Origin: Schmidtea nova
Lineage: Eukaryota
DNA: 64,000 nt
Assembly (NCBI GenBank): GCA_044892505.1
Contig: CM097883.1
Span: 322,958,001-323,022,000, forward strand
Direction: 5' to 3'
The notes beneath the pieces were generated by a model that saw nothing but the letters and a program-made list of their open reading frames with translations, did no database searches and had not been told where the DNA came from. Within the stretch, counting starts at the first letter, position 1; each line of letters begins with the position of its first letter. This document shows positions 1,574 through 30,037 of this stretch, piece by piece. The position numbers and the translations under genes were made by a program.

Positions 1574-1935
1574 TGTTGGGCCAGCCAAATAGAGGGAAAA
1601 GTGAAATAAAAGTAGAATAATTAAAACAAAAAGAGAAAAATAAGGTAAAAAGGGGGAATATTAATTTGTTAAAAGAAAAGAGTAATATAGTTAAAATATA
1701 GATAAATTAAGAACAAACTATAAATAAAAATAAATGAATTTCTAGATATTAACGGGCCCAGGAGACATCTAAAAACAAAATAAATACAAATAATAATAAT
1801 TAAAACCAAATAAAAGTACTTGTTATTGAATAATTGTTTTTGAAACCCAGACCTCCGAGGAAGAATACAATCTAAAAAATAAAAATTAATTAGAATCAAA
1901 AATAATAATCAAACCCACCATGAAACTGGCCGAAC

Positions 1936-2000
1936 CTGATTGGTCGGTCTAGACACGACTGATCAGTATAAATACTGATCAGATTTTTCATAAAATCAGA
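1936..2000 (+). promoter_or_regulatory. Putative LTR promoter: inverted CCAAT (ATTGG) and TATAAATA box (1967-1974) inside an 11-bp-arm palindrome
   Basis: CTGATTGG near 1936-1943, CTGATCAGTAT-AA-ATACTGATCAG at 1959-1982, and an initiator-like TCAG about 25 nt downstream. Same sequence in the 3' LTR. Confidence 0.55.
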
Positions 2001-2644
2001 CTTTGGTTGAGACTAAAATTTAGACGGTGTAAAAACTTAGACTTGTGTTCAGACGAAAAATTCACATTAGATTGTACATTGCTCCGACCGAGATCACCAC
2101 TAAGTTGATATTAACCAGGCTGATTTTCAATAGACGATCACCGTTTAGACCGATTTTAATCAAACCAATTTTCGGGATTCAATTTAGGTATTTTTGATAT
2201 ATTTACGTTTATTATTGATATTGTTGTATTCATATGTCATCACATTAAAATTTATTGATTATTTATCTCATTATGATTTATGTTTATATTTAAAATATAT
2301 AATGATCATATTAATTTTGCGCCGTTGGGAGCTCTAGGTTCCCAAGGTGTCAGTCCGTGGCGTGGTGCTCGAGGGCTCCACACACGGTAAAGTAATAAAT
2401 AACCAAATATGATTTTATTAGTAGTGGTCGAGATTTGCACATGGGACACCCAACGAATCCGGGGAATTATTTTCCGATCATTTTAGCTTTAGAGGAGGCG
2501 ATTTTCAGATAAAGTCTAACGATGTAGGATAGGAAAGAATTTTTGACTGTGAGGAGGCACAATTTTTCACCCTCACCACAGCACAGTCACTAAACCGCAG
2601 AAAATTATGTCGACCGCATTTGATACGAAAGGGGCGTCTTTCGA

Positions 2645-2650
2645 GTAAGT
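2645..2650 (+). promoter_or_regulatory. Candidate major 5' splice donor (GTAAGT) in the LTR
   Basis: Perfect GTAAGT intron consensus downstream of the putative TSS and upstream of all ORFs. Confidence 0.4.
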
Positions 2651-2935
2651 TAGGGAATACATGATGTGAGAGAGTTTCCGTTTTGAGGTATCAATGTTTC
2701 AATATCCAAGCAGACAAATCACCATTTTTCGACTATATTATTGAACAAGAACAGATAAATCTAAGCATACACGAGAGCAATGTATACCGTAACAAGCAAC
2801 AGTTTTTCTTGATTTCAGTTAAGGTCTAAGGGGAAGGCAAATAATAAAGGCATCACGATGAGAGATAACATCTACTATAATTAATTATTGATTTAAATTG
2901 TTAACTATTATAAAATTCAGCATCGTTCTAGTATC

Positions 2936-3412
2936 ATGACTAAGCACAGATTCACCATCAAAAAGCGACGAGAACGAGCCCGACTTAGCCCATTAAAGCC
3001 GGCTCCTTTTGAGATTTTGCAACAAATCCATCAAAAAATGTGGGCATGGCGCCGAGAGCTTGAAACCGCATGTCCATTTACAGTATGGGACCATCCACGG
3101 CATCACGTATGGTACCGGGGATGCGCTAGTTGGCCAATCATTCCAGACGAGGAATTCGAATCATGGCACGCCGCCTGGTTCGTTCTGATGTTAGATAAAA
3201 GAGGATTCCCGAACTGTGTAATTTATTGGGGGTTCATTCCAGCCTCTACATTCAAGGAATTGGGGTTCAAGTTCCATACAGCAATACGACCCCTTCGAGA
3301 AGCTGAGAGGATCCGTTTTCAACAGGCCTCGTCCAATATCACAGGAATCAACACAAATTTGCAAATCAGATCGATATTTTCGTACCGAGGAAAAATGACC
3401 GAAGATGAATAG
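2936..3412 (+). CDS. LTR-encoded ORF-A, 158 aa, unknown function (basic N-terminus, Trp-rich core)
   Basis: ATG preceded by acceptor-like TTCAG/CTAG, followed by AATAAA at 3443. Identical protein in the 3' LTR. Confidence 0.7.
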   Translation: MTKHRFTIKKRRERARLSPLKPAPFEILQQIHQKMWAWRRELETACPFTVWDHPRHHVWYRGCASWPIIPDEEFESWHAAWFVLMLDKRGFPNCVIYWGFIPASTFKELGFKFHTAIRPLREAERIRFQQASSNITGINTNLQIRSIFSYRGKMTEDE

Positions 3413-3732
3413 TTGAATCGATGGCCACCTGTTTTTAAATTTAATAAATGTTTTAGAGAAATCTGAAGTGTCTCATTTTGTTGATAGTATTGTAATGTAG
3501 ATTTATTAATATCCAGCGTTGTAGTTGTTATAGTCATTAGGAAATTCATTTACTAATTAGTTCAATAAATCTTTTGAGCCTTCAATAATTAGATAGTTAA
3601 ATAATTTTGCAAAGAACTCAATAATTAAAAACATTAGTATGCATCTCGTTTAATAATAATAATAGTTGTCTAAATAAAATACCATTGTTGATAGGTTCTC
3701 CAGCGAATTTATCGTTATAATATTCAGACATC

Positions 3733-4317
3733 ATGCCGGTTTCAGAAAACTCGAAGAGAATCATGGGACAAATCCAAGATAGAAAGTTGAGGGACCAGCA
3801 GCGGCAGATCAAGCGACTCACGGTCGCCAATGATGAATTGAGAGCGAAGTGGTTCTCGTCCGAACAAATGAAGGACCAATCGAAAAAACTCGAGCGAATG
3901 CAGGAAGCACTGGCCGCAACTAAATTGGAACTAGACGCCGTCCAGAGAGAACTACGAAATTGCCTAACTGCAGTAACAAGAAGCTATATCGACTCCGAAT
4001 TACGAGCGCTAATCCGGCCGATCACGGCTCAGCGCTGGACACAAAGTACTTATCAAGATGTCGCTTGCGGGACGGAAGATGGTATCCTCATGGCCCCCAC
4101 TCTTGTAACGGCCGATTTGCCTACTTTTCACAGTGATCCATCGAGAACAATGGCGTCAGCACCTGTCCTAAACCAACCGCTTCGAAAACACCGAATGGGA
4201 TCGCGACAGCGTCGTCGTCGCCGAGAATTTGCGAAGCGCCTGGACGAGCAAATCCACCACTTAAACTCCTTAACCGAAGCAGAGTTGATTCAGGAGATTA
4301 GTCTGGAGTTTGCATAG
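3733..4317 (+). CDS. LTR-encoded ORF-B, 194 aa: coiled coil, arginine-rich motif (RKHRMGSRQRRRRR), Leu-rich C-terminus
   Basis: Heptad-like charged N-half; TTCAG acceptor-like site 6 nt before the ATG; AATAAA at 4359. Confidence 0.72.
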   Translation: MPVSENSKRIMGQIQDRKLRDQQRQIKRLTVANDELRAKWFSSEQMKDQSKKLERMQEALAATKLELDAVQRELRNCLTAVTRSYIDSELRALIRPITAQRWTQSTYQDVACGTEDGILMAPTLVTADLPTFHSDPSRTMASAPVLNQPLRKHRMGSRQRRRRREFAKRLDEQIHHLNSLTEAELIQEISLEFA

Positions 4318-4881
4318 GAAAACATCAATGTCAAATAACAACCTGTTTTTATTATTTTAATAAAAGTATTTTGTGTAAATTTTGTCTCTCATCGTATGAC
4401 TTCACTAAATAAAATAAATAACTCGATTAAATCATAGAAATAGAAAATCTCATCAGTATTTTTTTCAGACCGACCGTTTCTACGTAGAGACTGATTAATT
4501 ACCTTGTAGATCAGTTAAGGAAAGTGCAATTGGGGAAAGCGTGTGATAGATCATGAGGATAGGTAGTATAAAATTCATTGGGAAACGAACATCCGTAGAA
4601 TGTAAATGCGTAAGACCTTCTATCGGCAGCAAGGACCCGAGGGAAGATAAATGGGGAGTAGTTTTGGCAACAAAGCTCACCTGCCCATCATTTTTCCAAC
4701 CCCGTATGCAGTACCAACTTGACTAGTAGGGAATAGTCAAGGGCATGCGCGTGTAGTAGTCATGTTATGTATGGTTATGGGCGTGGAATCCCTAGTATAC
4801 GTACTCATCAATAGTCGTTCAATTAATGATTAACTATTTATTTGAATTACTTAAAACCCACCCATAATCCCAGCATAAATT

Positions 4882-4899
4882 TGGGGGCTCAGCCGGGAT
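4882..4899 (+). promoter_or_regulatory. Primer binding site, tRNA-Pro type
   Basis: TGGGGGCTCAGCCGGGAT matches the MLV tRNA-Pro PBS (TGGGGGCTCGTCCGGGAT) at 16/18 and lies 6 nt after the LTR end. Confidence 0.85.
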
Positions 4900-5203
4900 C
4901 AACTTTGTTTTTATGCGGAAAAGGTGAACCCAATGACAACAGAGAAATTTAAAAATCAGAATTTTGTGAGTAGAAATAGTAACCGAAAGAGTAATCGAGA
5001 TAAAAGTGAGTCGCGTGGAAATAGATAATTACAAACAGAGAATTAAAACAAATTAGTAGATAAATTGAACAAATGCATTCATAAATAACAGGTCGGGACG
5101 ACAATTTACCGAAACACGGGGGGGCTATAAAACTGTCGGAAACGAAACACAGTACTACTTTTCCAATAATATCAACACAGTGTTTAAATAAATTATCTAG
5201 GAA

Positions 5204-5665
5204 ATGGAGGAAAAACTGAAAGAAATCGAGGAATTTTTCAACACCGAGAACGAAACATTTGAGACAGTCTGCGAAAAAATAACCCGAATAAGAGCATCCG
5301 AATATGAGGAACCTACGACACAAACGGAGGAAACAACTGAGTTAATAAAAATCATAGAGAAAGTAAATAAACTCGATATAAATACGCGATATAAATGGTA
5401 CAAAGCACGATTAGAGAATGCCGAGTTAAATATCAGATGCCGACATATGGAACAGCAGTTAAGTCTAACATATAACCGATAAATGTCGCAAGGGGTTGAG
5501 GCAGCAAAACAATATAAACAATGTTACATATGCGAAGACAGCGAAATCCAAATAATGTTTCTACCATGTGGACATTTTCGATTCTGTAAAAACTGTGCGA
5601 ATAAGTGTGATGAGTGCCCCATGTGCAATTTCTCTGTAACTGATAAAATTGTAGTTTATTTATAA
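5204..5665 (+). CDS. Coiled-coil plus C-terminal IAP-type C3HC4 RING protein, split by an in-frame TAA (5480-5482)
   Basis: ORFs 5204-5482 and 5483-5665 are in the same frame. CYICEDSEIQIMFLPCGHFRFCKNCANKCDECPMC...VYL-stop matches the IAP/MDM2-class terminal RING (Cx2C...FLPCGH...Cx2C...CPxC). Confidence 0.8.
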
Positions 5666-6140
5666 TAAATATTTAGAGTGTGTTAAAATATTGTATCGAA
5701 TGACAAAGTCTGGGGAGCAATCAACAATGTTAATTAATTTTTGAGCTACTGTCAAGTAGTCCGTTAAGCACCCATTGGGAGGTACCAGTTGATCAACCCA
5801 CTCGGGGTATATAGAAAGGGGCCAATCGCAAATGTTGGAAAGCTTTTGTGATGTGATTGATCACCACATCCTGCATTAGTAGACCAGCGCGATCTTTTTG
5901 TATATTTTGGTTGGGAGAGAAATAGGGAAACCCTAATGAGGTAGGATGCGCGCAGAGAAAATAATAAAAAATTGAAGTAGAACTGATCAGCGAAAGAATT
6001 AGTAATAAAACAAAGAATCGAGGAATTATAGAGAAAAATAAGAGGTGCATAATCAGCTCGCATGAAATTGAGAGAACTCAGCTGAGAAATTGTAGTCGCT
6101 AGCGAAGTTAAGAATTACGATTAACCGGTTAAGGAAAATT

Positions 6141-6323
6141 TATTAGAATTTGTCCCTTGAAACAAAGGGTTATTAGAATTTGTCCCTTGAAACAAAGGGT
6201 TATCAGCGGTTTGTCCCTTGAAACAAAGGGTTATTAGAATTTGTCCCTTGAAACAAAGGGTTATTAGAATTTGTCCCTTGAAACAAAGGGTTATCAGCGG
6301 GTTGTCCCTTGAAACAAAGGGTT
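6141..6323 (+). repeat. Tandem array 1: six copies of TGTCCCTTGAAACAAAGGGTT (period 30-31 bp)
   Basis: Copies at 6151, 6181, 6212, 6242, 6272 and 6303, with two alternating linker types. Confidence 0.95.
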
Positions 6324-6470
6324 GAGGCCAAAGAGCCATATTGAATGACCTAGCTAGGCGTTATTGAGAGATATGATTTAAGGCCAATAGAGCCATTTGA
6401 GATATGAATTTAAGGCCAATAGAGCCATTTGAGATAATTGATATTAATTAGAGGCCAAAGGAGCCAATAG
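6324..6470 (+). repeat. Tandem array 2: four copies of AGGCCAA(A/T)(A/G)GAGCCA
   Basis: Copies near 6325, 6381, 6413 and 6452. Confidence 0.85.
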
Positions 6471-6486
6471 GGATATCCGGATATAT

Positions 6487-6760
6487 AGCAACGGAGGGAA
6501 TATAGGCCCAGGGTTGCAATTAGTTAAAATTAAAGGAAGATAGTAACGGAGGGAATATAAGCCCAGGGTTACAATTGTTGAGAAGCAACGGAGGGAATAT
6601 AGGCCCAGGGTTGCAATTATTAAAAATTAAAGGAAGATAGTAACGGAGGGAATATAGGCCCAGGGTTACAATCGTTCGAGTAGCAACGGAGGGAATATAG
6701 GCCCAGGGTTGCAAGGGATAAGAAATAACAACAGAGGGAATATAGGCCCAGAGTTGTGAT
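6487..6760 (+). repeat. Tandem array 3: six ~33-bp hairpin-forming units (GCAAC-GGAGGGAATATAGGCCCAGG-GTTGC and variants)
   Basis: Copies near 6487, 6542, 6583, 6639, 6682 and 6727; the arms vary together. Confidence 0.92.
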
Positions 6761-7305
6761 CGTCGACGATAATGAGAATAGTGCGCACCAATAATTGAGA
6801 AATGCGAGTAAAGCTGATTATGCGACCTAAAATAATGCATGCAAGTAGAATTGAGAAATAGGAGCTGACCGGAAAGACCGGCAGAATTAATAATTAGAGG
6901 CTAGCAGAGAGAAAGATAAAGAGATGATAAAATAATAAACGAGTCAAATGACTCAGGAAATTAGAGCGTTCGAACGACAAATAAATTGGGAGACCGCGGA
7001 AAAAATAATTGATGTATTTTAATAACCGATAGATAATTGTTATGACTAAATAGATAATTGTGACCAGTATATAGATAATTTAAATAGACTTAAATAAAGG
7101 GGAATCTGGGAATGGGGAAAAATAATAGAAACCCAGTAATGAGAAGTCCCGTAAAAAGGGAATAAAAGCGCAACGATAACAATAGAGTATCGTTGAAGTG
7201 ACATTTGTATTTTAGATAAATCAATCAAATGAAACCAATCAACCAAGGAAGAAAAGAATCGGAATACGATAAGACAGGAAAATTGAGTATACAAAAGTAA
7301 TCCCG

Positions 7306-9063
7306 TTGAGAAAAGGAGAAAAGAGTGTCATAATAAAACCAACAGAGAAGAAAGTCGACAATAAAAATAAAAAAAAAGATAAGACCGGTACGATAACAAA
7401 CCCAACAAAAAAGAAGAAAGCCGGCAAAGATAGTAACAAAAACCCAAAAGGAAGTAAAGCAAGGCAGATAATAATACAGAAGTCGATTATCGAAAAAGAT
7501 AAATTATCAGTAACAAGCAACAGTTCAAGCAACAAAGAAAATCAAGCAGAACCCGAGAGAAACCCAATAAGTGAAATAGAAGTCGACAAAACCAACAACG
7601 ATTATATAGAAGAAGTAGAAGACGAAAGAGAAGAAACAGAAAGTGACGATACCGATAACGATAGTAAAGTATCGGACAACGAATCAGCAAAGGAAACTGA
7701 GATCGACATAAATTCAAGTGACGAACATAATAGTGAACTAGAAACAAGAGGAAACGAAAGTAAAATAACTACAGACAGCGGAATCGAAATGAGCGAACCC
7801 AGAGAAGAGATAAAAGACAAATTTTCCGGAGAACCGTTTAATGGAGATGCGAGTAAATTGGAAACTTTCTTAAAAGAATTTGGCATATTCGTGGAAGTAT
7901 GCAAGTGGAAACCAGAAACAACTGTAAGCAGAATTCAGCTATATTTAAAAGATAGCGCATTAGATCTATATTTGGAAGCAAAAAATGGAATTAATCCACC
8001 TACAAGTTGGTCAGCGATAAAGGACTTTTTCCAACAAACCTTCGGAATAAATAAAGTATTGAATGAGGCATTCACGGAATTCTCAATGAGGAAACAAAAG
8101 ATAAATGAATCGAATGCGGTATATGCAAGCGAATTGAAAAAGTTAGCAAAGTTGATCTTTAATCAAGACAGCCCAATAAATGAGGAGTTAATGGCAGCTA
8201 TCTTTGTGGGAGGATTAAGAAGACCCGACATAAGAGCGCAAGTTGGATGTCAAGGTTGTAAAACCATCGACCAAGCACTAGAAACAGCTAATAGATTTGA
8301 ACTACACATGATAGGAAATGATGGTAGAATCTATTTGGCTATGGATACAGCACAAAACGAACAAGAAGTGAACCTGAATAACCACATTCCAAATTCACAA
8401 CAATTAAACCGACCACCACCGCAACGAAGGAATGAAGGGAATAAAGTATCAAATTTCGGAAATCAAAGCAATTACAACCCCCAAGGACCAACGAAACAAT
8501 GCAAAACATGTGGGAAATTGGGACATTGGCAACAAGAATGTTATCAGAACTTGAATTGTGGAAAATGTGGAGTAAAAGGACATTCAGAGAGCAGATGTTA
8601 CACAATAACCTGTTTTAATTGTGGACGACCTGGACACCTATCAAGAAAGTGCGGACAAAGAAGCAATCAACGAGGAAACTGGCAGAATATTGGAAACCGA
8701 CCAAACTATGGAAACCAACCAACTGGTGGGAACCAACCGAATTATGGGAATCAGCCAAATAATGGAAACCGACCGGAATACGGAAACCAGCAAAATAATA
8801 ATAATAATAACCAAAATAAAAACACCCCTAAAGAAATACATTTAATGCAAGAGGTTCAAAGATTGACGGAGCTGATAAACAATACAAACAGAGGAAATCC
8901 GCAAACAGGTCAACAACAAATCAACATGATGAGAAAAATAGAAAGCGAAAACGAACGATTGAATCGGGAAAGTCAAGCACGACATGCTCAGGAATGGGCA
9001 AGAATACAAAGAGAAGAGGAACAAAAAACAGCAAGAAAGAGAACGACAACCTCTAAGAATTAA
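7306..9063 (+). CDS. gag: Gag: K/DE-rich N-extension, capsid-like domain, three CCHC zinc knuckles, Q/N-rich repeats
   Basis: FNGDASKLETFL retrotransposon-gag-like segment and knuckles CKTCGKLGHWQQEC, CGKCGVKGHSESRC, CFNCGRPGHLSRKC. The listed start is TTG; the first in-frame ATG is at 7789. Confidence 0.93.
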   Translation: MRKGEKSVIIKPTEKKVDNKNKKKDKTGTITNPTKKKKAGKDSNKNPKGSKARQIIIQKSIIEKDKLSVTSNSSSNKENQAEPERNPISEIEVDKTNNDYIEEVEDEREETESDDTDNDSKVSDNESAKETEIDINSSDEHNSELETRGNESKITTDSGIEMSEPREEIKDKFSGEPFNGDASKLETFLKEFGIFVEVCKWKPETTVSRIQLYLKDSALDLYLEAKNGINPPTSWSAIKDFFQQTFGINKVLNEAFTEFSMRKQKINESNAVYASELKKLAKLIFNQDSPINEELMAAIFVGGLRRPDIRAQVGCQGCKTIDQALETANRFELHMIGNDGRIYLAMDTAQNEQEVNLNNHIPNSQQLNRPPPQRRNEGNKVSNFGNQSNYNPQGPTKQCKTCGKLGHWQQECYQNLNCGKCGVKGHSESRCYTITCFNCGRPGHLSRKCGQRSNQRGNWQNIGNRPNYGNQPTGGNQPNYGNQPNNGNRPEYGNQQNNNNNNQNKNTPKEIHLMQEVQRLTELINNTNRGNPQTGQQQINMMRKIESENERLNRESQARHAQEWARIQREEEQKTARKRTTTSKN

Positions 9064-15085: not shown

Positions 15086-15139
15086 ACGAGACGGTGCAGA
15101 AGCGTAGATCCGCAAGGAGACTCACATACAATTGCAGTA

Positions 15140-15817
15140 ATGTCATCAAACACCGGTCCAGTATTAACCACCACAATCGAAATTAACGGAAGGGAAATTG
15201 AAGCGATGATTGATACAGGAGCAAATATCTCAGCAATAGATATAAAATGGATACCACAAGAACAAAGACGGGAGATTGAGAGAACCAACGTTCACGTAAT
15301 AGCATGCAGTAAAGAAGTAGTAGAAGTTGCCGGAAGATGGTGGGTAAAGATAAAACATCAAAACACGGAAATCGAAACGTACGTAGCAGTAATACCAGCA
15401 CTAAGCGTACCATGCATTATAGGCACGGATCTGATGCCAGCATTATTTAAAGAAATAGTTATTGATCTCGGAACAATGAGACTAAAGGATAGGACAGGAC
15501 AGATATGCGCAATAGAAGCAAAAGTAACAAGTTCGAAACAAATAATCGTACCAGCCCGGAGAGAGAAAATATGTTTCGTAAAAATAGATCCTACAATAGA
15601 AGGTGACATGATCTTTGAACCCAGTAAAAGATTTGAAAAGAGAAAGTCGTTGCCAATGGCAAGGGGATTAGTGAGTGCGAATGACAACGGAGAAATCCCA
15701 ATAAATGTAGTAAATTTCGATGAAGAGGATAAAATAATTTATGAAAATGAAAGATTAGGTAAACTAACTCCAATGATGGATATCGAAATACCAATAAGAG
15801 AGGGAGAAAAAAGATGA
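15140..15817 (+). CDS. Retropepsin aspartic protease followed by a possible degenerate dUTPase-like spacer
   Basis: AMIDTGANISAI catalytic motif and CIIGTDLM flap-distal motif. In frame with ORF2 across a single TGA. Confidence 0.92.
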   Translation: MSSNTGPVLTTTIEINGREIEAMIDTGANISAIDIKWIPQEQRREIERTNVHVIACSKEVVEVAGRWWVKIKHQNTEIETYVAVIPALSVPCIIGTDLMPALFKEIVIDLGTMRLKDRTGQICAIEAKVTSSKQIIVPARREKICFVKIDPTIEGDMIFEPSKRFEKRKSLPMARGLVSANDNGEIPINVVNFDEEDKIIYENERLGKLTPMMDIEIPIREGEKR

Positions 15818-22751: not shown

Positions 22752-22789
22752 GAGGCGGGATATGACTGTAAATAATAGTGTAAATAACA

Positions 22790-23290
22790 ATGCATTACCG
22801 TAATAGTATGGGTATCGATATTATAAAAATACAAAAAGAGAAACCGAAAACGATTAATGTATATAATTTAGAAATGAACGAACAGGAAGAAATAGCAGAA
22901 ACTACTATGGCTATGCGATGGAAAGCCCAGTGTGACATGTTAATACGAACGATCAACTCACTACAAAATCAGTTAATTGAGAAACAGAATTTGTTATCCG
23001 AAAGTTATAATAATAGTTTTGAACAACTCCACAGAATCGAGGAGCAACAGAGATTGATAACGCAACTTACCAGAGAGAATCAAATGATGAGCGACATAAA
23101 TCAGAGACAAGCAATAGAGATAGACCGTTTAACAATGGGAGAGACAGAAGAAGCAGAGGATGGATGGACAAATTGGGCAATAAACAGATCAGAAAATGAC
23201 CCAGAACCAGATTCAACAAACGAGCCGTGGATAAATAAAGCGAAAAATTGTAAATATGTAAAAACAAAAACAAGAAAAATCAAAAAATAG
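22790..23290 (+). CDS. 166-aa coiled-coil accessory protein, unknown function
   Basis: Heptad-rich LQNQLIEKQNLL…LITQLTRENQ; same strand and codon bias as the element. Confidence 0.7.
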   Translation: MHYRNSMGIDIIKIQKEKPKTINVYNLEMNEQEEIAETTMAMRWKAQCDMLIRTINSLQNQLIEKQNLLSESYNNSFEQLHRIEEQQRLITQLTRENQMMSDINQRQAIEIDRLTMGETEEAEDGWTNWAINRSENDPEPDSTNEPWINKAKNCKYVKTKTRKIKK

Positions 23291-23321
23291 ATAACAAATC
23301 AAGTGTATATATCATTGTAGA

Positions 23322-24698
23322 ATGAATACAGAAGGAAAAGCCGAAGAGCGGATAATCGAAATTTTGAGAGCCGAGAACAGGAAATGGAGTCAGAGACTCA
23401 CTTGTGTAAATTGTAAAAACATAATATTGAAACCAAGACAAACCCTATGCGGATGCAGAGTATGTACCAAATGCATACACGAGTTAAGTATGAAAAGACC
23501 ACCAGAATGTCCAGAATGCAAAGGACAAATAAAATTCGAAGAAACCAGACCAGATAGAGCAACTCAGAGAGAAATCATGAACACGAAAACCGAATGTATA
23601 AATCAACCATGTATATGGCAAGGACAAATACGCGATCTCGAGAACCATCTGGAGAACTGCGAAAAGAAAACTGAATGTAACAAATGCCAACAAAAAATAA
23701 CTATAAAGAATAAAGAGCAGCACAAAGATGAATGTAAAGAAGAGGAAAGTCTATGCGAATATTGTGGAACTCGAGAAACGAGGAGAAAGATCGAAGAAGA
23801 ACACCTGAATGTAAAAGAGGAGAAAGTATGTAGACAATATGTAGGAATATGTTCAAACGAATGCGAGATAACGGTAGAAGTAAAATTACAAGAACATTGG
23901 AAAGTGTGCACGGAGAAACCAAGGGAATGTCCTTATAACAAACAGGGATGTATGGAGAAAAGAACGCAACAAACCATGAAACAACATCTGGAGGAAGCAT
24001 TGCTAAAGCATGCGGAAATGACAAACGAAGCAACAAAAGAAACCGAACAAACGATCAAAAAATTAGAAAGAGAAATAGAGTCACACAAGATAATGGTAAG
24101 CCTACTGTTGGAAACCAGAGAGCAATTCGAACTAACACGAGAAAAAATGAAGAGAAAGATAAAAGCTATTGAAGAATTGGCTAAAGGAATGAAAATCCAA
24201 TACAACAAACTCACCCAGGATACCGAGGAAAAGCTACCAATCGCACCATACGTATGGAAAGTGACAGATTTTAGAGACAAATTAACACAGGCCCGAAACA
24301 TGACGAAAACAGCAGTAATAAGCCCACCATTTTATTTATGGAGAAACGGAGCTAAAGTGAGATTGAAGCTATACCCAAATGGAGACGGAAGAGGACGAGG
24401 AACACATGTGTCAATATTTTTCTCGCTATGTAAAGGAGAATACGACGACCTAGTAGAATGGCCCTTGAAAGTAGGAGTCATTGTAAGAATCAGAAGTGTA
24501 ACAAAACCAGTAGAAAAATTCTTTGAGACAGAGAAACATGCGAGTACAAGCGAGAAACCAACCACAGAATGTGGATTAGCAGCGGGAGAACCGATGTTTA
24601 TAACGAAAGAAAGCCTATGGGAACGATTATATGCAGACACCCTATATATAGAAATGGAAAGGAACGAGAAAGCGGATAGAAAAGGATGGTTGACGTAA
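23322..24698 (+). CDS. TRAF: Full-length intronless TRAF-family protein (RING, TRAF zinc fingers, coiled coil, MATH/TRAF-C)
   Basis: RING CVNC..KPRQTLCGCRVCTKC..CPEC, then PDRATQREI and zinc fingers. MATH domain YVWKVTDF…SPPFY…KLYPNGDGRGRGTHVSIFFSLCKGEYDDLVEWP parallels TRAF2/3/5. Confidence 0.95.
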   Translation: MNTEGKAEERIIEILRAENRKWSQRLTCVNCKNIILKPRQTLCGCRVCTKCIHELSMKRPPECPECKGQIKFEETRPDRATQREIMNTKTECINQPCIWQGQIRDLENHLENCEKKTECNKCQQKITIKNKEQHKDECKEEESLCEYCGTRETRRKIEEEHLNVKEEKVCRQYVGICSNECEITVEVKLQEHWKVCTEKPRECPYNKQGCMEKRTQQTMKQHLEEALLKHAEMTNEATKETEQTIKKLEREIESHKIMVSLLLETREQFELTREKMKRKIKAIEELAKGMKIQYNKLTQDTEEKLPIAPYVWKVTDFRDKLTQARNMTKTAVISPPFYLWRNGAKVRLKLYPNGDGRGRGTHVSIFFSLCKGEYDDLVEWPLKVGVIVRIRSVTKPVEKFFETEKHASTSEKPTTECGLAAGEPMFITKESLWERLYADTLYIEMERNEKADRKGWLT

Positions 24699-24810
24699 AA
24701 CGAGAAGTGATCATGTAAATAATATGTACAGTTAAATACCCAAAAATTATTATATAAACAAAAATAACTGATATATAAACCGATTAAAATTTTTTTCTGT
24801 AATTATAGCA

Positions 24811-25872
24811 ATGGGAAATATCGAAGTATGCTTACAGGAAATTACGATGCATCAAGCAGAAGCGATTAGCGATCATCTAGAACAGATTGAAATATGGGTC
24901 AATGCATATTATGGAAAGCAAGAGGAGGTAGAGAGACAAGCCGAATTATTAAAAGAAGCGGAAAGATCAAGTCAAAGAATTCGAGAAAAAATAGAAGAAG
25001 TATACAAAATGCTACAACAACAAAAGGAATATTACCAGGGAATGATGAAAGAGCGACGAGAGGAAAGAGACAGACAGCAGATGGAAGCTGAACACAAGAT
25101 GTATTCGATTACAGAACAAGCAAGATACTGGAAGAAAGAAGCAAAAGAATCTTACGAAAAAGCTAAAGAAATAATAGAAAAGACAGCGTATAGTGATGAC
25201 TGGAAGTTATATAAAGAGATCGACGAATTAAAAGACGAGTTAGAACAGAAAATCCACCAAGAAGTGTTGAATAAGAGATGGAATACAAAGAGACAGCAAT
25301 TTATCCGGGAACAAGCAAAGAAAATTAAAGGACTAACCTATCAAGTTCAAAGAATGGGAGAAGAACTAGCTAATCAGGAACAACTGAAAATTATGCTCAC
25401 CGGAATATGGAATCAGAAAGAAGAAGAGATGAAGAGAGATATAAATGGTTATCAAGGAGTGATTACCCAGAAGAAAATAGAGCTAAAAAGAACCAGAGAA
25501 AGGTTAAAGGAAGCGAAGCAAAGTTATGAGGAAAATTTAACGAATTTGATGAAAGAAAACGAAGAATTGAAACAGAAACGAGTAACAGTACCAGCAATAC
25601 CCAAAGAAGCAAGTATAACGGCAGCCGTAACAAAAATGATGAAAGAAGACGAACAAAAGACAAAAGTAATCGAATTAGAGAAGCAAATAGAAACATTAAC
25701 AGAACAAGCAAATTACCTAGAATATTTGCTGGACGAGGAGATCCAGATATCTCACATGTATCGAGATGAAGTCGAAATGTGGAGGAGAAGGGTTGTTTGG
25801 ATACCACTCCCCACGAACCAAGTAGAGCCTCAGGACGAAGGTTTCTACGAACCAAACGAGACGATTGTGTAA
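24811..25872 (+). CDS. 353-aa long coiled-coil accessory protein
   Basis: Almost continuous E/K/Q-rich heptads; pyrimidine tract plus ATAG just before the ATG; AATAAA overlaps the stop. Confidence 0.75.
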   Translation: MGNIEVCLQEITMHQAEAISDHLEQIEIWVNAYYGKQEEVERQAELLKEAERSSQRIREKIEEVYKMLQQQKEYYQGMMKERREERDRQQMEAEHKMYSITEQARYWKKEAKESYEKAKEIIEKTAYSDDWKLYKEIDELKDELEQKIHQEVLNKRWNTKRQQFIREQAKKIKGLTYQVQRMGEELANQEQLKIMLTGIWNQKEEEMKRDINGYQGVITQKKIELKRTRERLKEAKQSYEENLTNLMKENEELKQKRVTVPAIPKEASITAAVTKMMKEDEQKTKVIELEKQIETLTEQANYLEYLLDEEIQISHMYRDEVEMWRRRVVWIPLPTNQVEPQDEGFYEPNETIV

Positions 25873-25955
25873 ATAAAGCGGAAAATATAATTTTTGTAAA
25901 TAATTATATGAAATGTAGTGTCAAATTGTATTGACCTATCTGTAAAGAAAACAGT

Positions 25956-26510
25956 ATGAAAAAGCTCAGAATACCGATATTCCTATACCTAATAACAATC
26001 ACCCTACAAAGAGAAGATCTTCAACTCACAGAGAAGGAGCTACGAGCCCTACCCGAGAAAACCTATCAAGAGCTAGATAAACTAATCAGCGAAGCAACAC
26101 AAGAAAACACCCAACTTCAACAGATAACATTAGGCAAACCAAACGACGAAAAATTTCAACAGGTCCTATATGAACATCGAATCAAATTGAAAACAATCAG
26201 AAAAACCCTAAAAGAAGGTCGAGAACCCATAAAAAGCTTAGCCCAAGCAGAGACAGAATATCAAGAAAAATGGATCATCGCAATTATAATAATCCTTGCA
26301 CTCAGCGTGACCATTATCGCATTCACAATCCTCATAACATCATACCGAGTGAAGATCCTAAAACAAAAACAAGTCATCCTGAATCGAACAACAATACAAG
26401 ACATCAGAACCCAAAAAACGAATGAGAAAACATCTCAACCGAATCCAAAGCCACTACGAACTACGAACAATCAGCGAAAGAACCCCAATCCAATCCAATA
26501 CCAATCATGA
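25956..26510 (+). CDS. 184-aa predicted type I membrane protein
   Basis: N-terminal hydrophobic MKKLRIPIFLYLITITL, helical ectodomain, TM WIIAIIIILALSVTIIAFTILITSY and basic tail. Confidence 0.72.
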   Translation: MKKLRIPIFLYLITITLQREDLQLTEKELRALPEKTYQELDKLISEATQENTQLQQITLGKPNDEKFQQVLYEHRIKLKTIRKTLKEGREPIKSLAQAETEYQEKWIIAIIIILALSVTIIAFTILITSYRVKILKQKQVILNRTTIQDIRTQKTNEKTSQPNPKPLRTTNNQRKNPNPIQYQS

Positions 26511-26698
26511 AATCAAAGAGCTTGTGTAAAACTGATAAATTACATTCACTTTATGTATGATCCACTTACATTTAACAATAACATAACTTTGTGCTTACGT
26601 ATAAACTCTATCACCTTATGTGATTCTTTGTGTATATGTAAATTGACATTTATCTGCTTAATTTTTATGTATGATGATATAGTTGTAAATGTATAATT

Positions 26699-26733
26699 AA
26701 TTGCGGGACGCAATTTTAGGGGTCCCCGAGTGA
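26699..26733 (+). promoter_or_regulatory. Plus-strand priming region (atypical PPT)
   Basis: AATTGCG-GGA-CGCAATT hairpin, then TTTTAGGGGTCCCCGAGTGA directly before the 3' LTR; only a short purine run. Confidence 0.45.
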
Positions 26734-28095
26734 TGTTGGGCCAGCCAAATAGAGGGAAAAGTGAAATAAAAGTAGAATAATTAAAACAAAAAGAGAAAAA
26801 TAAGGTAAAAAGGGGGAATATTAATTTGTTAAAAGAAAAGAGTAATATAGTTAAAATATAGATAAATTAAGAACAAACTATAAATAAAAATAAATGAATT
26901 TCTAGATATTAACGGGCCCAGGAGGCATCTAAAAACAAAATAAATACAAATAATAATAATTAAAACCAAATAAAAGTACTTGTTATTGAATAATTGTTTT
27001 TGAAACCCAGACCTCCGAGGAAGAATACAATCTAAAAAATAAAAATTAATTAGAATCAAAAATAATAATCAAACCCACCATGAAACTGGCCGAACCTGAT
27101 TGGTCGGTCTAGACACGACTGATCAGTATAAATACTGATCAGATTTTTCATAAAATCAGACTTTGGTTGAGACTAAAATTTAGACGGTGTAAAAACTTAG
27201 ACTTGTGTTCAGACGAAAAATTCACATTAGATTGTACATTGCTCCGACCGAGATCACCACTAAGTTGATATTAACCAGGCTGATTTTCAATAGACGATCA
27301 CCGTTTAGACCGATTTTAATCAAACCAATTTTCGGGATTCAATTTAGGTATTTTTGATATATTTACGTTTATTATTGATATTGTTGTATTCATATGTCAT
27401 CACATTAAAATTTATTGATTATTTATCTCATTATGATTTATGTTTATATTTAAAATATATAATGATCATATTAATTTTGCGCCGTTGGGAGCTCTAGGTT
27501 CCCAAGGTGTCAGTCCGTGGCGTGGTGCTCGAGGGCTCCACACACGGTAAAGTAATAAATAACCAAATATGATTTTATTAGTAGTGGTCGAGATTTGCAC
27601 ATGGGACACCCAACGAATCCGGGGAATTATTTTCCGATCATTTTAGCTATAGAGGAGGCGATTTTCAGATAAAGTCTAACGATGTAGGATAGGAAAGAAT
27701 TTTTGACTGTGAGGAGGCACAATTTTTCACCCTCACCACAGCACAGTCACTAAACCGCAGAAAATTATGTCGACCGCATTTGATACGAAAGGGGCGTCTT
27801 TCGAGTAAGTTAGGGAATACATGATGTGAGAGAGTTTCCGTTTTGAGGTATCAATGTTTCAATATCCAAGCAGACAAATCACCATTTTTCGACTATATTA
27901 TTGAACAAGAACAGATAAATCTAAGCATACACGAGAGCAATGTATACCGTAACAAGCAACAGTTTTTCTTGATTTCAGTTAAGGTCTAAGGGGAAGGCAA
28001 ATAATAAAGGCATCACGATGAGAGATAACATCTACTATAATTAATTATTGATTTAAATTGTTAACTATTATAAAATTCAGCATCGTTCTAGTATC

Positions 28096-28572
28096 ATGAC
28101 TAAGCACAGATTCACCATCAAAAAGCGACGAGAACGAGCCCGACTTAGCCCATTAAAGCCGGCTCCTTTTGAGATTTTGCAACAAATCCATCAAAAAATG
28201 TGGGCATGGCGCCGAGAGCTTGAAACCGCATGTCCATTTACAGTATGGGACCATCCACGGCATCACGTATGGTACCGGGGATGCGCTAGTTGGCCAATCA
28301 TTCCAGACGAGGAATTCGAATCATGGCACGCCGCCTGGTTCGTTCTGATGTTAGATAAAAGAGGATTCCCGAACTGTGTAATTTATTGGGGGTTCATTCC
28401 AGCCTCTACATTCAAGGAATTGGGGTTCAAGTTCCATACAGCAATACGACCCCTTCGAGAAGCTGAGAGGATCCGTTTTCAACAGGCCTCGTCCAATATC
28501 ACAGGAATCAACACAAATTTGCAAATCAGATCGATATTTTCGTACCGAGGAAAAATGACCGAAGATGAATAG
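28096..28572 (+). CDS. ORF-A copy in the 3' LTR
   Basis: Identical translation to 2936-3412. Confidence 0.65.
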   Translation: MTKHRFTIKKRRERARLSPLKPAPFEILQQIHQKMWAWRRELETACPFTVWDHPRHHVWYRGCASWPIIPDEEFESWHAAWFVLMLDKRGFPNCVIYWGFIPASTFKELGFKFHTAIRPLREAERIRFQQASSNITGINTNLQIRSIFSYRGKMTEDE

Positions 28573-28892
28573 TTGAATCGATGGCCACCTGTTTTTAAAT
28601 TTAATAAATGTTTTAGAGAAATCTGAAGTGTCTCATTTTGTTGATAGTATTGTAATGTAGATTTATTAATATCCAGCGTTGTAGTTGTTATAGTCATTAG
28701 GAAATTCATTTACTAATTAGTTCAATAAATCTTTTGAGCCTTCAATAATTAGATAGTTAAATAATTTTGCAAAGAACTCAATAATTAAAAACATTAGTAT
28801 GCATCTCGTTTAATAATAATAATAGTTGTCTAAATAAAATACCATTGTTGATAGGTTCTCCAGCGAATTTATCGTTATAATATTCAGACATC

Positions 28893-29294
28893 ATGCCGGT
28901 TTCAGAAAACTCGAAGAGAATCATGGGACAAATCCAAGATAGAAAGTTGAGGGACCAGCAGCGGCAGATCAAGCGACTCACGGTCGCCAATGATGAATTG
29001 AGAGCGAAGTGGTTCTCGTCCAAACAAATGAAGGACCAATCGAAAAAACTCGAGCGAATGCAGGAAGCACTGGCCGCAACTAAATTGGAACTAGACGCCG
29101 TCCAGAGAGAACTACGAAATTGCCTAACTGCAGTAACAAGAAGCTATATCGACTCCGAATTACGAGCGCTAATCCGGCCGATCACGGCTCAGCGCTGGAC
29201 ACAAAGTACTTATCAAGATGTCGCTTGCGGGACGGAAGATGGTATCCTCATGGCCCCCACTCTTGTAACGGCCGATTTGCCTACTTTTCAGTGA
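28893..29294 (+). pseudogene. ORF-B copy in the 3' LTR, truncated to 133 aa by a 2-bp deletion
   Basis: TTTTCA-CA-GTGA becomes TTTTCA-GTGA; also an E-to-K change at 29022. Confidence 0.8.
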
Positions 29295-30037
29295 TCCATC
29301 GAGAACAATGGCGTCAGCACCTGTCCTAAACCAACCGCTTCGAAAACACCGAATGGGATCGCGACAGCGTCGTCGTCGCCGAGAATTTGCGAAGCGCCTG
29401 GACGAGCAAATCCACCACTTAAACTCCTTAACCGAAGCAGAGTTGATTCAGGAGATTAGTCTGGAGTTTGCATAGGAAAACATCAATGTCAAATAACAAC
29501 CTGTTTTTATTATTTTAATAAAAGTATTTTGTGTAAATTTTGTCTCTCATCGTATGACTTCACTAAATAAAATAAATAACTCGATTAAATCATAGAAATA
29601 GAAAATCTCATCAGTATTTTTTTCAGACCGACCGTTTCTACGTAGAGACTGATTAATTACCTTGTAGATCAGTTAAGGAAAGTGCAATTGGGGAAAGCGT
29701 GTGATAGATCATGAGGATAGGTAGTATAAAATTCATTGGGAAACGAACATCCGTAGAATGTAAATGCGTAAGACCTTCTATCGGCAGCAAGGACCCGAGG
29801 GAAGATAAATGGGGAGTAGTTTTGGCAACAAAGCTCACCTGCCCATCATTTTTCCAACCCCGTATGCAGTACCAACTTGACTAGTAGGGAATAGTCAAGG
29901 GCATGCGCGTGTAGTAGTCATGTTATGTATGGTTATGGGCGTGGAATTCCTAGTATACGTACTCATCAATAGTCGTTCAATTAATGATTAACTATTTATT
30001 TGAATTACTTAAAACCCACCCATAATCCCAGCAAAAT

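What the first reader, a model, noticed from the sequence alone, without database searches (positions are those of the whole stretch)
1574..30033. Giant enveloped Gypsy element carrying a multi-gene cell-death / TNF-NF-kB toolkit
One young 28.5-kb element encodes TRAF, an IAP-type RING, a Bcl-2-like fold, ubiquitin-like domains, ankyrin clusters and receptor-like membrane proteins, plus a fusion glycoprotein (seen in sequence). TRAF, cIAP RING, ubiquitin and IkB-type ankyrins act together in TNF-receptor/NF-kB signalling, and large DNA viruses capture the same classes to block apoptosis (established). The inference is a retrotransposon that has become a complex infectious virus manipulating host survival and immune signalling. 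Giant >30-kb Gypsy 'Burro' elements are known from the planarian Schmidtea mediterranea, so the family may be related or already catalogued. The novelty is this particular domain combination and must be checked.
Basis: partly seen in the sequence, partly recalled or inferred. Interest (0 to 1): 0.95.

Follow-up and report, generated by a model that had tools for sequence, protein, structure and literature searches.

The report
Known giant Burro-type retroelement copy
This is a young, nearly complete copy of the giant "Burro"-type envelope-carrying Gypsy retroelement of planarian flatworms; its load of cell-death and ubiquitin-related domains is real, but it and the "provirus that meddles with apoptosis" idea were published in 2007-2019.

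Summary
Window 1574-30033 is one 28,460-bp Ty3/gypsy LTR retroelement: 3.3-kb LTRs 99.8% identical, TG...CA ends, 4-bp target duplication.

Strongly recovered: gag with three CCHC knuckles, a Monjiviricetes-type fusion glycoprotein between gag and protease, PR, RT, RNase H, IN, two ankyrin clusters, a complete TRAF (RING, zf-TRAF, coiled coil, MATH) and an IAP-type RING. Below significance but pointing the same way: ubiquitin-like, Bcl-2-like, dUTPase-like and FN3-like modules. No BIR was found.

The same collinear architecture is in print for planarian Burro/GYPSM1 elements (PMC6431247, citing Jurka 2007 and Grohme 2018), as is the idea of an integrated provirus meddling with apoptosis and ubiquitination.

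This copy differs only in layout. TRAF is a separate full-length gene after pol, a RING mini-gene sits in the leader, and an FN3-like membrane module ends pol.

The gag-pol frame is interrupted three times. No other copies could be compared, so selection on the cargo, the NF-kB link and infectivity remain untested. Novelty is low and interest modest.

The parts
1574..30033 (+). Whole LTR retroelement (28,460 bp)
   Evidence: Direct 3.3-kb repeats at both ends, TG...CA termini, 4-bp target duplication
1574..4875 (+). 5' LTR (3302 bp)
   Evidence: 99.8% identical to the 3' LTR: 4 substitutions and one 2-bp indel
26734..30033 (+). 3' LTR (3300 bp)
1570..1573 (.). Target-site duplication AAAT (second copy at 30034-30037)
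   Evidence: Read directly
4882..4900 (+). Primer binding site, 19 nt starting TGG; its complement looks like a tRNA 3' end with a T-arm; tRNA not identified
   Evidence: Read directly; no tRNA gene in the window
5204..5665 (+). Leader accessory gene: coiled-coil segment followed in the same frame by an IAP-type RING. One in-frame stop lies between them, so it is either one interrupted gene or two small ORFs.
5516..5641 (+). IAP-type C3HC4 RING domain
   Evidence: PF13920 E 5e-13; XIAP/cIAP1/cIAP2/ML-IAP RINGs E 2.6e-12 to 4e-8
6140..6755 (.). Tandem repeat arrays in the untranslated leader (30-bp unit x6; 97-bp unit x2.3)
   Evidence: tandem repeats are drawn for Burro elements in PMC6431247 Fig. 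2A legend
7273..22751 (+). gag-to-pol polyprotein coding region, about 5,080 codons in four consecutive open segments. It is interrupted 3 times (2 frame changes, 1 in-frame stop). First ATG of the gag frame is at 7789.
7942..8220 (+). Gag capsid-like domain (Retrotrans_gag, weak)
   Evidence: E 9e-4
8500..8652 (+). Three CCHC zinc knuckles
   Evidence: zf-CCHC E 3e-8; three pattern matches
9716..11338 (+). Post-gag region shared with the only database relative, P0008 (31% identity). P0008 has a MATH domain inserted here; this copy has none.
10580..10825 (+). Ubiquitin-like (beta-grasp) candidate
   Evidence: Ubiquitin_4 top Pfam hit, E 0.04; beta-beta-alpha-beta-beta in a low-confidence model; Foldseek top hits LC3/GABARAP/ubiquitin, E 0.09-0.4
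12206..12688 (+). Bcl-2-like candidate (all-helical, BH2-like GGW motif)
   Evidence: PF00452 top Pfam hit, E 0.18; model pLDDT 45; Foldseek top ~50 PDB hits almost all Bcl-xL/Bcl-2, E 0.4-1.8
12776..15082 (+). Envelope module: signal-like hydrophobic segment (12776-12808), fusion glycoprotein domain (12788-14623), membrane anchor (14528-14587), long cytoplasmic tail
   Evidence: PF24664 Monjiviricetes_fusion E 1e-69, profile positions 6-580 of 653; hydropathy; one relative, P0011, at 36% identity
15170..15442 (+). Aspartic protease
   Evidence: RVP E 1e-9
15551..15793 (+). dUTPase-like candidate between PR and RT
   Evidence: All 5 weak PDB hits are dUTPase or dCTP deaminase, E 0.05-0.1; no Pfam hit
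16107..18056 (+). Reverse transcriptase (16107-16583), RNase H (16770-17159), integrase (17484-18056)
   Evidence: RVT_1 E 2e-37, RT_RNaseH E 1e-37, Integrase_H2C2 E 3e-22, rve E 1e-10
18804..19316 (+). Ankyrin repeat cluster 1
   Evidence: Ank_2 E 1e-14; DARPin/ankyrin PDB hits
19800..20108 (+). Ankyrin repeat cluster 2
   Evidence: PDB ankyrin hits E 1e-8; weak Ank_2
20811..22574 (+). Type I membrane module at the end of pol: signal-like segment (20811-20849), four ~80-aa Cys-containing FN3-like repeats (20874-22256), membrane anchor (22506-22574), short tail
   Evidence: the repeat profile hits only FN3 domains of tenascin and contactin, E 0.5-1; fn3 E 0.1 for one repeat
22790..23290 (+). 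Accessory ORF, 166 aa, coiled-coil-like, no family match
23322..24698 (+). Complete TRAF-like gene, 458 aa: RING (23385-23591), TRAF zinc finger (23823-23987), coiled coil, MATH/TRAF-C (24234-24656)
   Evidence: MATH_2 E 1e-20, zf-TRAF E 8e-5; TRAF5/3/2 TRAF-C E 4e-22 and TRAF6/5/2 RING E 1e-10 to 1e-7
24811..25872 (+). Accessory ORF, 353 aa, long coiled coil, no family match
25956..26510 (+). Accessory ORF, 184 aa: N-terminal signal-like segment, coiled-coil ectodomain, one membrane anchor, basic tail

Best explanation
The region is one recently inserted, nearly full-length copy of a Burro-type giant Ty3/gypsy LTR retroelement. The host is most probably a dugesiid planarian such as Schmidtea.

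Shown here:
- It has the complete LTR-element apparatus: LTRs, primer binding site, gag with three zinc knuckles, PR, RT, RNase H and IN.
- A class III-type viral fusion glycoprotein is embedded between gag and protease (GAG-ENV-POL order).
- A same-strand, compositionally uniform cargo is present. It comprises an IAP-type RING mini-gene in the leader, two ankyrin clusters and an FN3-like membrane module fused behind integrase. After pol come four compact accessory ORFs, one of them a complete TRAF.

Below significance in this copy: ubiquitin-like and Bcl-2-like modules after gag, and a dUTPase-like module after PR.

Inferred mechanism:
- The genomic RNA is translated into a very long polyprotein.
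- Internal signal-like segments send the Env and FN3 modules into the ER membrane, and the protease releases the cytosolic modules.
- Env would allow cell-to-cell passage, for example from differentiated cells into stem cells.
- The RING E3, TRAF adaptor, Bcl-2-like and Ubl modules would bias host ubiquitin, stress-kinase and cell-death decisions in favour of the producing cell.

This architecture and this hypothesis are already in the literature for Burro/GYPSM1. The present copy is a layout variant and carries three interruptions of gag-pol.
For: - LTR structure and youth.
- Core and env domains and their order.
- Three CCHC knuckles.
- IAP-type RING.
- Complete TRAF.
- Ankyrin clusters.
- Weak but top-ranked Ubl, Bcl-2 and dUTPase signals, in the positions published for Burro.
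- FN3-like membrane module.
- Cargo ORFs share the A-rich composition and codon usage of gag/PR/RT (A 41-46%; r 0.63-0.90). The LTR ORFs and a neighbouring hAT fragment do not (r 0.38-0.48).
- AT-rich flanks (24-33% GC). Planarian genomes are >70% A/T (PMC11410931).
- The only relative of the post-gag region among 1.84 billion representatives is P0008. It carries a MATH domain after that region, as described for Burro1.
- Literature: PMC6431247 section 7 gives the collinear order Gag(3 CCHC)-MATH-Ubi/SUMO-BCL2-Env-PR-dUTPase-RT-RH-IN, with BIR and ankyrin also reported (position not stated), tandem repeats and the provirus/apoptosis hypothesis. PMC13524379 reports GAG-ENV-POL with gB-type Env in Platyhelminthes. 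PMC8532177 shows BURRO1 is expressed and under PIWI control.
Against: - No Burro reference sequence was available, so family membership rests on architecture and one distant relative, not on phylogeny.
- The host species was not identified.
- No BIR pattern or domain is present in any forward frame.
- MATH/TRAF is not inside the polyprotein as in Burro1. It is a separate gene after pol.
- Its MATH domain is no closer to P0008's (33%) than to cellular TRAFs (34-36%).
- The Bcl-2, Ubl, dUTPase and FN3 calls are all below significance, and both structure models are low confidence (pLDDT 45 and 32).
- gag-pol is interrupted three times, whereas Burro1 is described with a single 4,873-aa ORF.
- The functional part (cell-death and ubiquitin modulation, cell-to-cell passage) has no direct evidence here.
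Confidence: 0.85

Rival explanations
1. One reading: the element is today a complex, infectious retrovirus-like agent whose cargo forms a coordinated TNF-receptor/NF-kB and apoptosis toolkit.
For: Env with a signal-like segment, ectodomain and anchor is open. The LTRs are 99.8% identical. All cargo ORFs are open. TRAF plus IAP-type RING plus a probable Bcl-2-like module are present. BURRO1 is described as abundant and active (PMC8532177).
Against: gag-pol is interrupted three times in this copy. Nothing tested links the ankyrin repeats to IkB or the cargo to NF-kB; planarian immune signalling in the review read runs through TAK1/p38/JNK components (PMC7958881). No data on particles, transmission or horizontal spread were available. 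The idea is already published as a hypothesis.
Confidence: 0.15
2. The cargo serves the element's own replication rather than host cell-death or immune control. The ubiquitin-like modules, RING E3 and TRAF adaptor would support Gag ubiquitination, trafficking, budding or polyprotein turnover. The ankyrin and FN3 modules would act as assembly or attachment scaffolds.
For: The Ubl candidates lie directly after gag inside the polyprotein. Cargo composition is fully matched to the core genes, which argues for long co-evolution with the element. It is established that retroviral budding uses ubiquitin ligases.
Against: The Bcl-2-like module and IAP-type RING are classic cell-death regulators. A complete TRAF with a receptor-peptide-binding MATH domain is an adaptor of host signalling, not a known assembly factor.
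Confidence: 0.2
3. This copy, and perhaps the cargo in general, is a decaying passenger load: a dead insertion whose accessory ORFs are open only because it is young.
For: There are three interruptions in gag-pol and one in the leader RING gene. At the LTR divergence rate, about 14 post-insertion changes are expected in gag-pol, so these interruptions could simply be decay or assembly errors (my arithmetic). No close copies exist in the protein libraries to show conservation.
Against: About 9.7 kb of cargo coding sequence stays open on one strand in compact order. The cargo classes recur in distant Burro lineages of two genera according to PMC6431247 and in P0008 at 31% identity. Such retention across deep divergence argues for selection.
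Confidence: 0.3
4. Artefact: an ordinary Gypsy element with host genes nested in it, or a chimeric assembly.
For: The window contains assembly gaps elsewhere, and planarian genomes are hard to assemble.
Against: There are no N runs inside 1574-30033. All genes lie on one strand between matching LTRs with a target duplication. Composition and codon usage are uniform across core and cargo. The published family has the same collinear order.
Confidence: 0.03

Closest known systems
[quoted passage not shown] 2018; reviewed in PMC6431247)
   Same: Size class (>25 kb with multi-kb LTRs); leader tandem repeats; gag with three CCHC knuckles; Ubl and BCL2-like modules after gag; mononegavirus-like env between gag and PR; dUTPase-like module between PR and RT; ankyrin repeats; MATH/TRAF cargo; total gag-pol length about 5,000 codons.
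   Different: Here MATH is absent from the polyprotein, and a complete RING-zf-coiled coil-MATH TRAF is a separate gene after pol. No BIR was found, only an IAP-type RING mini-gene in the leader. An FN3-like type I membrane module ends pol. gag-pol is not a single ORF in this copy. Sequence identity to the catalogued entries could not be measured.
Burro-like element of Dugesia (Girardia) tigrina described in PMC6431247
   Same: The polyprotein lacks MATH_TRAF_C, which is encoded by a separate accessory ORF; gag-env-pol order.
   Different: There the accessory ORF is upstream and gag has two knuckles; here TRAF is downstream of pol and gag has three. The midasin-like homology reported there was not seen here.
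Env-carrying Ty3/gypsy elements ('errantiviruses') of Platyhelminthes, Nematoda and Bryozoa with GAG-ENV-POL order and gB-type class III Env (PMC13524379)
   Same: Ty3/gypsy core; env placed between gag and pol; env of the class III / chuvirus-mononegavirus-like kind (Pfam PF24664).
   Different: Those elements are described without a large accessory cargo. Here about 9.7 kb of extra coding sequence is present, and env appears fused in frame to upstream modules.
Anti-apoptotic genes of large DNA viruses (baculovirus IAP, herpesvirus vBcl-2), as a functional analogy
   Same: The same protein classes are carried by a mobile or viral genome: IAP-type RING, and a probable Bcl-2 fold. The top BFVD hit was a gammaherpesvirus protein (A9) and another was a gammaherpesvirus v-Bcl-2-like protein; neither was significant.
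   Different: Replication strategy is unrelated (retroelement). No BIR. No functional data.
Cellular TRAF2/3/5/6
   Same: Full TRAF domain order. The TRAF-C domain aligns to TRAF5/3/2 at E 4e-22 and the RING to TRAF6/5/2.
   Different: Only 25-28% identity to the best full-length database TRAFs. It is encoded inside a retroelement with retroelement-like A-rich codon usage.

Membership tests
Ty3/gypsy LTR retrotransposon | Two direct LTRs with TG...CA ends and a short target-site duplication | tested here: met
   4-bp AAAT duplication
Ty3/gypsy LTR retrotransposon | Domain order PR-RT-RNase H-IN, with Ty3/gypsy-type RNase H and H2C2 integrase families | tested here: met
   RVP, RVT_1, RT_RNaseH, RT_RNaseH_2, Integrase_H2C2, rve in that order
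Ty3/gypsy LTR retrotransposon | tRNA primer binding site next to the 5' LTR and a polypurine tract before the 3' LTR | tested here: inconclusive
   A 19-nt TGG-initiated PBS-like site lies at 4882-4900, but the tRNA was not identified. Only a short purine run precedes the 3' LTR.
Ty3/gypsy LTR retrotransposon | RT phylogeny inside the Ty3/gypsy clade | not tested
   No reference set was at hand. The only comparison is 33% identity over RT-IN to another Gypsy in the same window.
Burro group of giant planarian Gypsy elements | Total length >25-30 kb with internal region >20 kb | tested here: met
   28,460 bp in total; 21.9 kb internal
Burro group of giant planarian Gypsy elements | Gag with retrotrans_gag motif and three CCHC knuckles (S. 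mediterranea type) | tested here: met
Burro group of giant planarian Gypsy elements | Mononegavirus-like env located between gag and PR | tested here: met
   PF24664 E 1e-69, upstream of RVP
Burro group of giant planarian Gypsy elements | Ubi/SUMO-like and BCL2-like modules between gag and env; dUTPase-like module between PR and RT | tested here: inconclusive
   Each is the top-ranked hit in the expected position, but all are below significance.
Burro group of giant planarian Gypsy elements | MATH_TRAF_C and ankyrin cargo | tested here: met
   TRAF is in a different position from Burro1
Burro group of giant planarian Gypsy elements | BIR domain | tested here: not met
   No BIR in Pfam scans of the ORFs, and no C2HC BIR pattern in any forward frame. 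Only an IAP-type RING is present.
Burro group of giant planarian Gypsy elements | Single giant gag-pol ORF | tested here: not met
   Three interruptions in this copy. Whether they are copy-specific is unknown.
Burro group of giant planarian Gypsy elements | Sequence similarity to catalogued Burro-1 to -4/GYPSM1; planarian host | not testable with these tools
   No Repbase/Dfam or planarian genome in the collections. Exact look-ups of flank ORFs found nothing. Grohme 2018 is not held.
Platyhelminth GAG-ENV-POL env-carrying Ty3/gypsy (PMC13524379) | ORF order gag-env-pol with a class III (gB/chuvirus-like) fusogen | tested here: met
   Order and Pfam family are met. The class III fold itself was not modelled.
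TRAF family (ORF 23322-24698) | N-terminal RING, TRAF zinc fingers, coiled coil, C-terminal MATH/TRAF-C | tested here: met
IAP family (leader RING gene) | At least one BIR domain; C-terminal RING of the IAP type | tested here: not met
   The RING is met but BIR is absent. It is an IAP-type RING protein, not an IAP.
Bcl-2 family | Helical bundle with BH1-BH2 motifs and a BH3-binding groove | tested here: inconclusive
   PF00452 E 0.18, over the BH2 end only. No PDB sequence hit. Model pLDDT 45. Foldseek hits are consistent but not significant.
IkB proteins | Ankyrin repeat domain that binds Rel/NF-kB, plus a signal-responsive degron | not tested
   Only generic ankyrin matches were found; no IkB-specific comparison was possible.

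The most novel reading that the evidence does not exclude
This copy may represent an uncatalogued Burro lineage. In it the cell-death and ubiquitin cargo would have been re-partitioned into independent accessory genes: a complete RING-containing TRAF after pol, a BIR-less IAP-type RING gene in the leader, and an FN3-like type I membrane protein with a small membrane protein as possible surface or receptor-mimic factors. The three gag-pol interruptions would then be family-wide recoding sites rather than damage. That would make it a 'complex retrovirus-like' genome organisation in a flatworm Gypsy element, with cargo under purifying selection.
Probability: 0.2. Interest if true: 0.55.

Novelty: already known. 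Interest (0 to 1): 0.22.

Why it matters
Burro-type elements are the largest LTR retroelements known and fill a sizeable part of planarian genomes. They are also the clearest case of a retroelement carrying cell-death, ubiquitin and signalling modules of the kind seen in large DNA viruses.

A clean, young copy with every cargo ORF open is a useful reference for descriptive work: a copy census, tests of selection, and transcript mapping. It also carries a practical warning. The reported expansion of MATH/TRAF genes in S. mediterranea transcriptomes (PMC6109357) could partly reflect element-borne TRAF/MATH sequences.

It does not open a new question. The architecture and the hypothesis are in print, and what is missing is functional and population evidence.

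Tried and rejected
- Protein library searches with the TRAF ORF, the post-integrase cargo and Env found no close copies, only distant cellular TRAFs, one ankyrin protein and one unnamed Env relative (P0011, 36%).
- A full HMMER scan of 1.84 billion representatives with the first 1,200 residues downstream of gag found a single relative, P0008. It has no contig on record.
- The best TRAF hit's contig (L001) is an unrelated gene with 14 MATH and 7 zf-TRAF domains, not a retroelement. I dropped it.
- AlphaFold2 of the Bcl-2 candidate (single sequence) and of the Ubl region (two-sequence alignment) gave pLDDT 45 and 32. The Foldseek results are therefore only hints.
- phmmer against PDB found nothing for the post-gag region or the Bcl-2 candidate.
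- Rfam and tRNA scans of the window were empty.
- Species identification by exact look-up of two flank ORFs failed.
- Grohme 2018 and the supplements of two papers were not held, so Burro-2 to -4 layouts and probe or PBS tables could not be checked.
- I considered and rejected a nested host-gene insertion or chimeric assembly, on composition and collinearity.
- I do not accept the LTR ORFs (2936-3412, 3733-4317) as element genes. They have no family match, a different composition, and one differs between the two LTRs.

Full report
**1. Observation**

A self-comparison of the window shows a 3.3-kb direct repeat at 1574-4875 and 26734-30033.
- The two copies differ by 4 substitutions and one 2-bp indel.
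- They begin with TG and end with CA, and the tetranucleotide AAAT flanks them on both sides.
- A 19-nt site starting TGG lies 6 nt after the 5' LTR. Its complement looks like a tRNA 3' end.
- The element is 36-40% G+C and strongly A-rich on the + strand (AT skew 0.30-0.47 across the 2-kb bins from 6001 to 26000). The flanks are 24-33% G+C without skew.
- There are no N runs inside it.

**2. Core genes**

All long ORFs lie on the + strand. Pfam gives the following order.
- Gag: Retrotrans_gag (weak) plus zf-CCHC, with three knuckles by pattern.
- A long region without family matches.
- A Monjiviricetes-type viral fusion glycoprotein: PF24664, E 1e-69, covering profile positions 6-580 of 653.
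- Retroviral protease, reverse transcriptase, RNase H and integrase (H2C2 plus core).

This is a Ty3/gypsy core with env between gag and pol. The glycoprotein domain is preceded by the only short hydrophobic segment of that region. It is followed by a strong membrane anchor and a ~165-residue tail.

The gag-to-pol coding region is about 5,080 codons, in four consecutive open segments. Relative to a single reading frame it is interrupted three times: two frame changes and one in-frame stop. I do not list the places.

At the LTR divergence rate, roughly 14 post-insertion changes are expected over these 15.5 kb (my arithmetic). So the interruptions may be decay or assembly error. They could also be family-wide recoding sites. 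One copy cannot tell.

**3. Cargo, strongly supported**

(a) *Leader RING gene.* An ORF in the leader carries a C3HC4 RING of the IAP kind.
- PF13920 E 5e-13.
- Best solved relatives are the RINGs of XIAP, cIAP2, cIAP1 and ML-IAP, E 2.6e-12 to 4e-8.
- It is preceded in the same frame by a coiled-coil ORF, with one in-frame stop between them.
- No BIR is present anywhere in the forward frames. It is an IAP-type RING protein, not an IAP.

(b) *TRAF.* ORF 23322-24698 is a complete TRAF.
- Its RING aligns to TRAF6/5/2 RING-zinc-finger structures.
- It also has a TRAF zinc finger, a coiled coil and a MATH/TRAF-C domain. The latter aligns to TRAF5/3/2 at E 4e-22.

(c) *Ankyrin.* Two ankyrin clusters follow integrase in the same frame. 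They are generic ankyrin repeats; nothing marks them as IkB-like.

**4. Cargo, weakly supported**

*Post-gag region.* It has a single relative among 1.84 billion representative proteins: P0008 (UniParc entry, 882 aa, 31% identity). P0008 has a MATH domain inserted where this element has none. That matches the published Burro1 order gag-MATH-Ubl-BCL2-env.

*Ubl and Bcl-2 in this copy.*
- The best Pfam hit on 10544-10840 is Ubiquitin_4 (E 0.04). The best on 12206-12688 is Bcl-2 (E 0.18, BH2 end).
- AlphaFold2 models were poor, with pLDDT 32 and 45.
- Even so, Foldseek's top lists were dominated by LC3/GABARAP/ubiquitin (E 0.09-0.4) and by Bcl-xL/Bcl-2 (E 0.4-1.8).
- In the viral library the top hit was a gammaherpesvirus protein (A9) and rank 15 a gammaherpesvirus v-Bcl-2-like protein; neither was significant.
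- These are consistent hints, not proof.

*dUTPase-like.* The segment after the protease domain gives only dUTPase or dCTP-deaminase hits (E 0.05-0.1). That is the position published for Burro.

*Membrane modules.*
- The last ~650 residues of the pol frame form a signal-like segment, four ~80-residue repeats with invariant Cys, Trp and Tyr positions, a membrane anchor and a short tail. The profile of the repeats hits only FN3 domains of tenascin and contactin (E 0.5-1).
- ORF 25956-26510 is a small signal, coiled-coil and anchor protein.
The membrane topology is predicted; 'receptor' is speculation.

*Coiled-coil ORFs.* ORFs 22790-23290 and 24811-25872 are coiled-coil proteins without family matches.

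**5. Is the cargo part of the element?**

Yes, as far as one copy can show.
- All cargo lies on one strand in compact order inside the LTR pair.
- Its base composition (A 41-46%, third-position A 42-54%) and codon frequencies correlate with gag/PR/RT (r 0.63-0.90).
- The LTR ORFs and the neighbouring hAT fragment do not (r 0.38-0.48).
- This argues for long residence in the element rather than recent capture, nesting or mis-assembly.
- The MATH domain of the TRAF gene is no closer to P0008's MATH (33%) than to oyster or Trichoplax TRAFs (34-36%). A common or separate origin of element-borne MATH domains stays open.

**6. What is known**

PMC6431247 (Arkhipova and Yushenova 2019, section 7) summarises Jurka 2007 (GYPSM1) and Grohme et al. 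2018 (Burro-1 to -4).
- These are giant planarian Gypsy elements of >30 kb with leader tandem repeats.
- The polyprotein is 4,873-5,140 aa. Its order is Gag (three CCHC knuckles in S. mediterranea), MATH_TRAF_C, Ubi2/SUMO-like, BCL2-like, env in frame, PR, dUTPase-like, RT, RNase H, IN. The env has hits to arthropod and fish mononegavirus glycoproteins. BIR and ankyrin motifs are also reported.
- The D. tigrina relative lacks MATH in the polyprotein and encodes it in an accessory ORF.
- The authors state that these elements may be integrated proviruses 'meddling' with apoptosis and ubiquitination.

Two further papers bear on this.
- PMC13524379 reports GAG-ENV-POL Ty3/gypsy elements with gB-type Env in Platyhelminthes.
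- PMC8532177 shows BURRO1 is abundant, expressed in differentiated tissue and held down by SMEDWI-2/piRNAs.

**7. What differs here**
- TRAF is a complete, separate gene after pol.
- The IAP-like part is a BIR-less RING gene in the leader.
- An FN3-like membrane module ends pol.
- gag-pol is not one ORF.

I could not read the layouts of Burro-2 to -4 or compare with any reference sequence. Whether this exact family is catalogued is therefore untested. Given a curated repeat library for the most likely host, I think it probably is.

**8. Mechanism (inferred)**
- Transcription starts from the 5' LTR, with tRNA-primed reverse transcription.
- Translation gives a very long polyprotein. Internal signal-like segments insert the Env and FN3 modules into the ER membrane, and the protease frees the cytosolic modules.
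- Env mediates passage between cells.
- The RING E3, TRAF, Bcl-2-like and Ubl modules bias ubiquitin, stress-kinase and cell-death decisions of the host cell.
- My probability that the cargo acts on host cell-death or ubiquitin pathways is about 0.45. My probability that the family is currently transmissible between cells or animals is about 0.15-0.2.
- None of this is shown here.

**9. Steps left out and disclosures**

That covers search for related loci, exact look-ups with the element's own proteins, and the contig of P0011. This is why no copy census or dN/dS is reported.

The N runs were left alone. No contig looked human.

*Disclosures.*
- Before settling on the rule above, I looked up P0008 (nothing on record) and P0009 (an unrelated multi-MATH gene, L001).
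They bracket the interruptions. I went no further and do not repeat them here.

**10. Verdict**

Novelty is low. The remaining value is as a clean reference copy for descriptive follow-up.

Noticed in passing
window 60043-63672 (- strand): A second, ordinary-sized Gypsy pol ORF (1209 aa: PR, RT, RNase H, IN), 33% identical to the Burro-type RT-IN. It has the same A-rich coding bias and probably runs on towards the window end.
   Followed up: partly
window 34506-35207 (+): A 233-aa ORF with a hAT-family C-terminal dimerisation domain (E 2e-16): a fragment of a hAT DNA transposon.
   Followed up: partly
window 55107-56437 and 57753-59079: A 1.35-kb inverted repeat pair, 92.7% identical, about 1.3 kb apart, with no sizeable ORF between the arms. 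It may be a foldback or long-TIR element. A small palindrome lies at 53873-54067.
   Followed up: no
window 2936-3412 and 3733-4317 (copies in the 3' LTR at 28096-28572 and 28893-29294): Two ORFs lie inside the 3.3-kb LTR. They have no family match and a composition unlike the element's genes (46-50% G+C, A 30%). The second differs in length between the two LTRs. They are probably not genes, but 3.3-kb LTRs are unusually long and their content is unexplained.
   Followed up: partly
window 7273-7788: The gag frame is open for about 170 codons upstream of its first ATG and encodes a low-complexity, charged sequence. The start codon may be lost, initiation may be non-AUG or spliced, or the stretch may be open by chance in T-poor sequence.
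   Followed up: no
window 6140-6323 and 6487-6755: Tandem arrays lie in the untranslated leader. The 30-bp unit contains a short inverted repeat (stem-loop-like). The function is unknown; similar tandem repeats are drawn for Burro elements.
   Followed up: no
window 550-865: A 158-bp unit is repeated twice in tandem (99% identical) in the AT-rich 5' flank.
   Followed up: no
L001 987-13122 (ENA metagenome scaffold): A TRAF-like gene with three MATH domains is followed by a giant ORF (>3,200 aa) with 14 MATH and 7 TRAF zinc-finger domains. It is not a retroelement. The organism is unknown.
   Followed up: partly
window 45313-45477 and 46794-46959: 166-bp direct repeats (96% identical) border the N runs in a very AT-rich stretch (10-19% G+C). 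The N runs were left untouched.
   Followed up: no
literature (PMC6109357) versus window 23322-24698: The reported expansion of MATH/TRAF transcripts in S. mediterranea might in part be element-borne TRAF/MATH sequences from Burro-type copies. This is an idea only.
   Followed up: no
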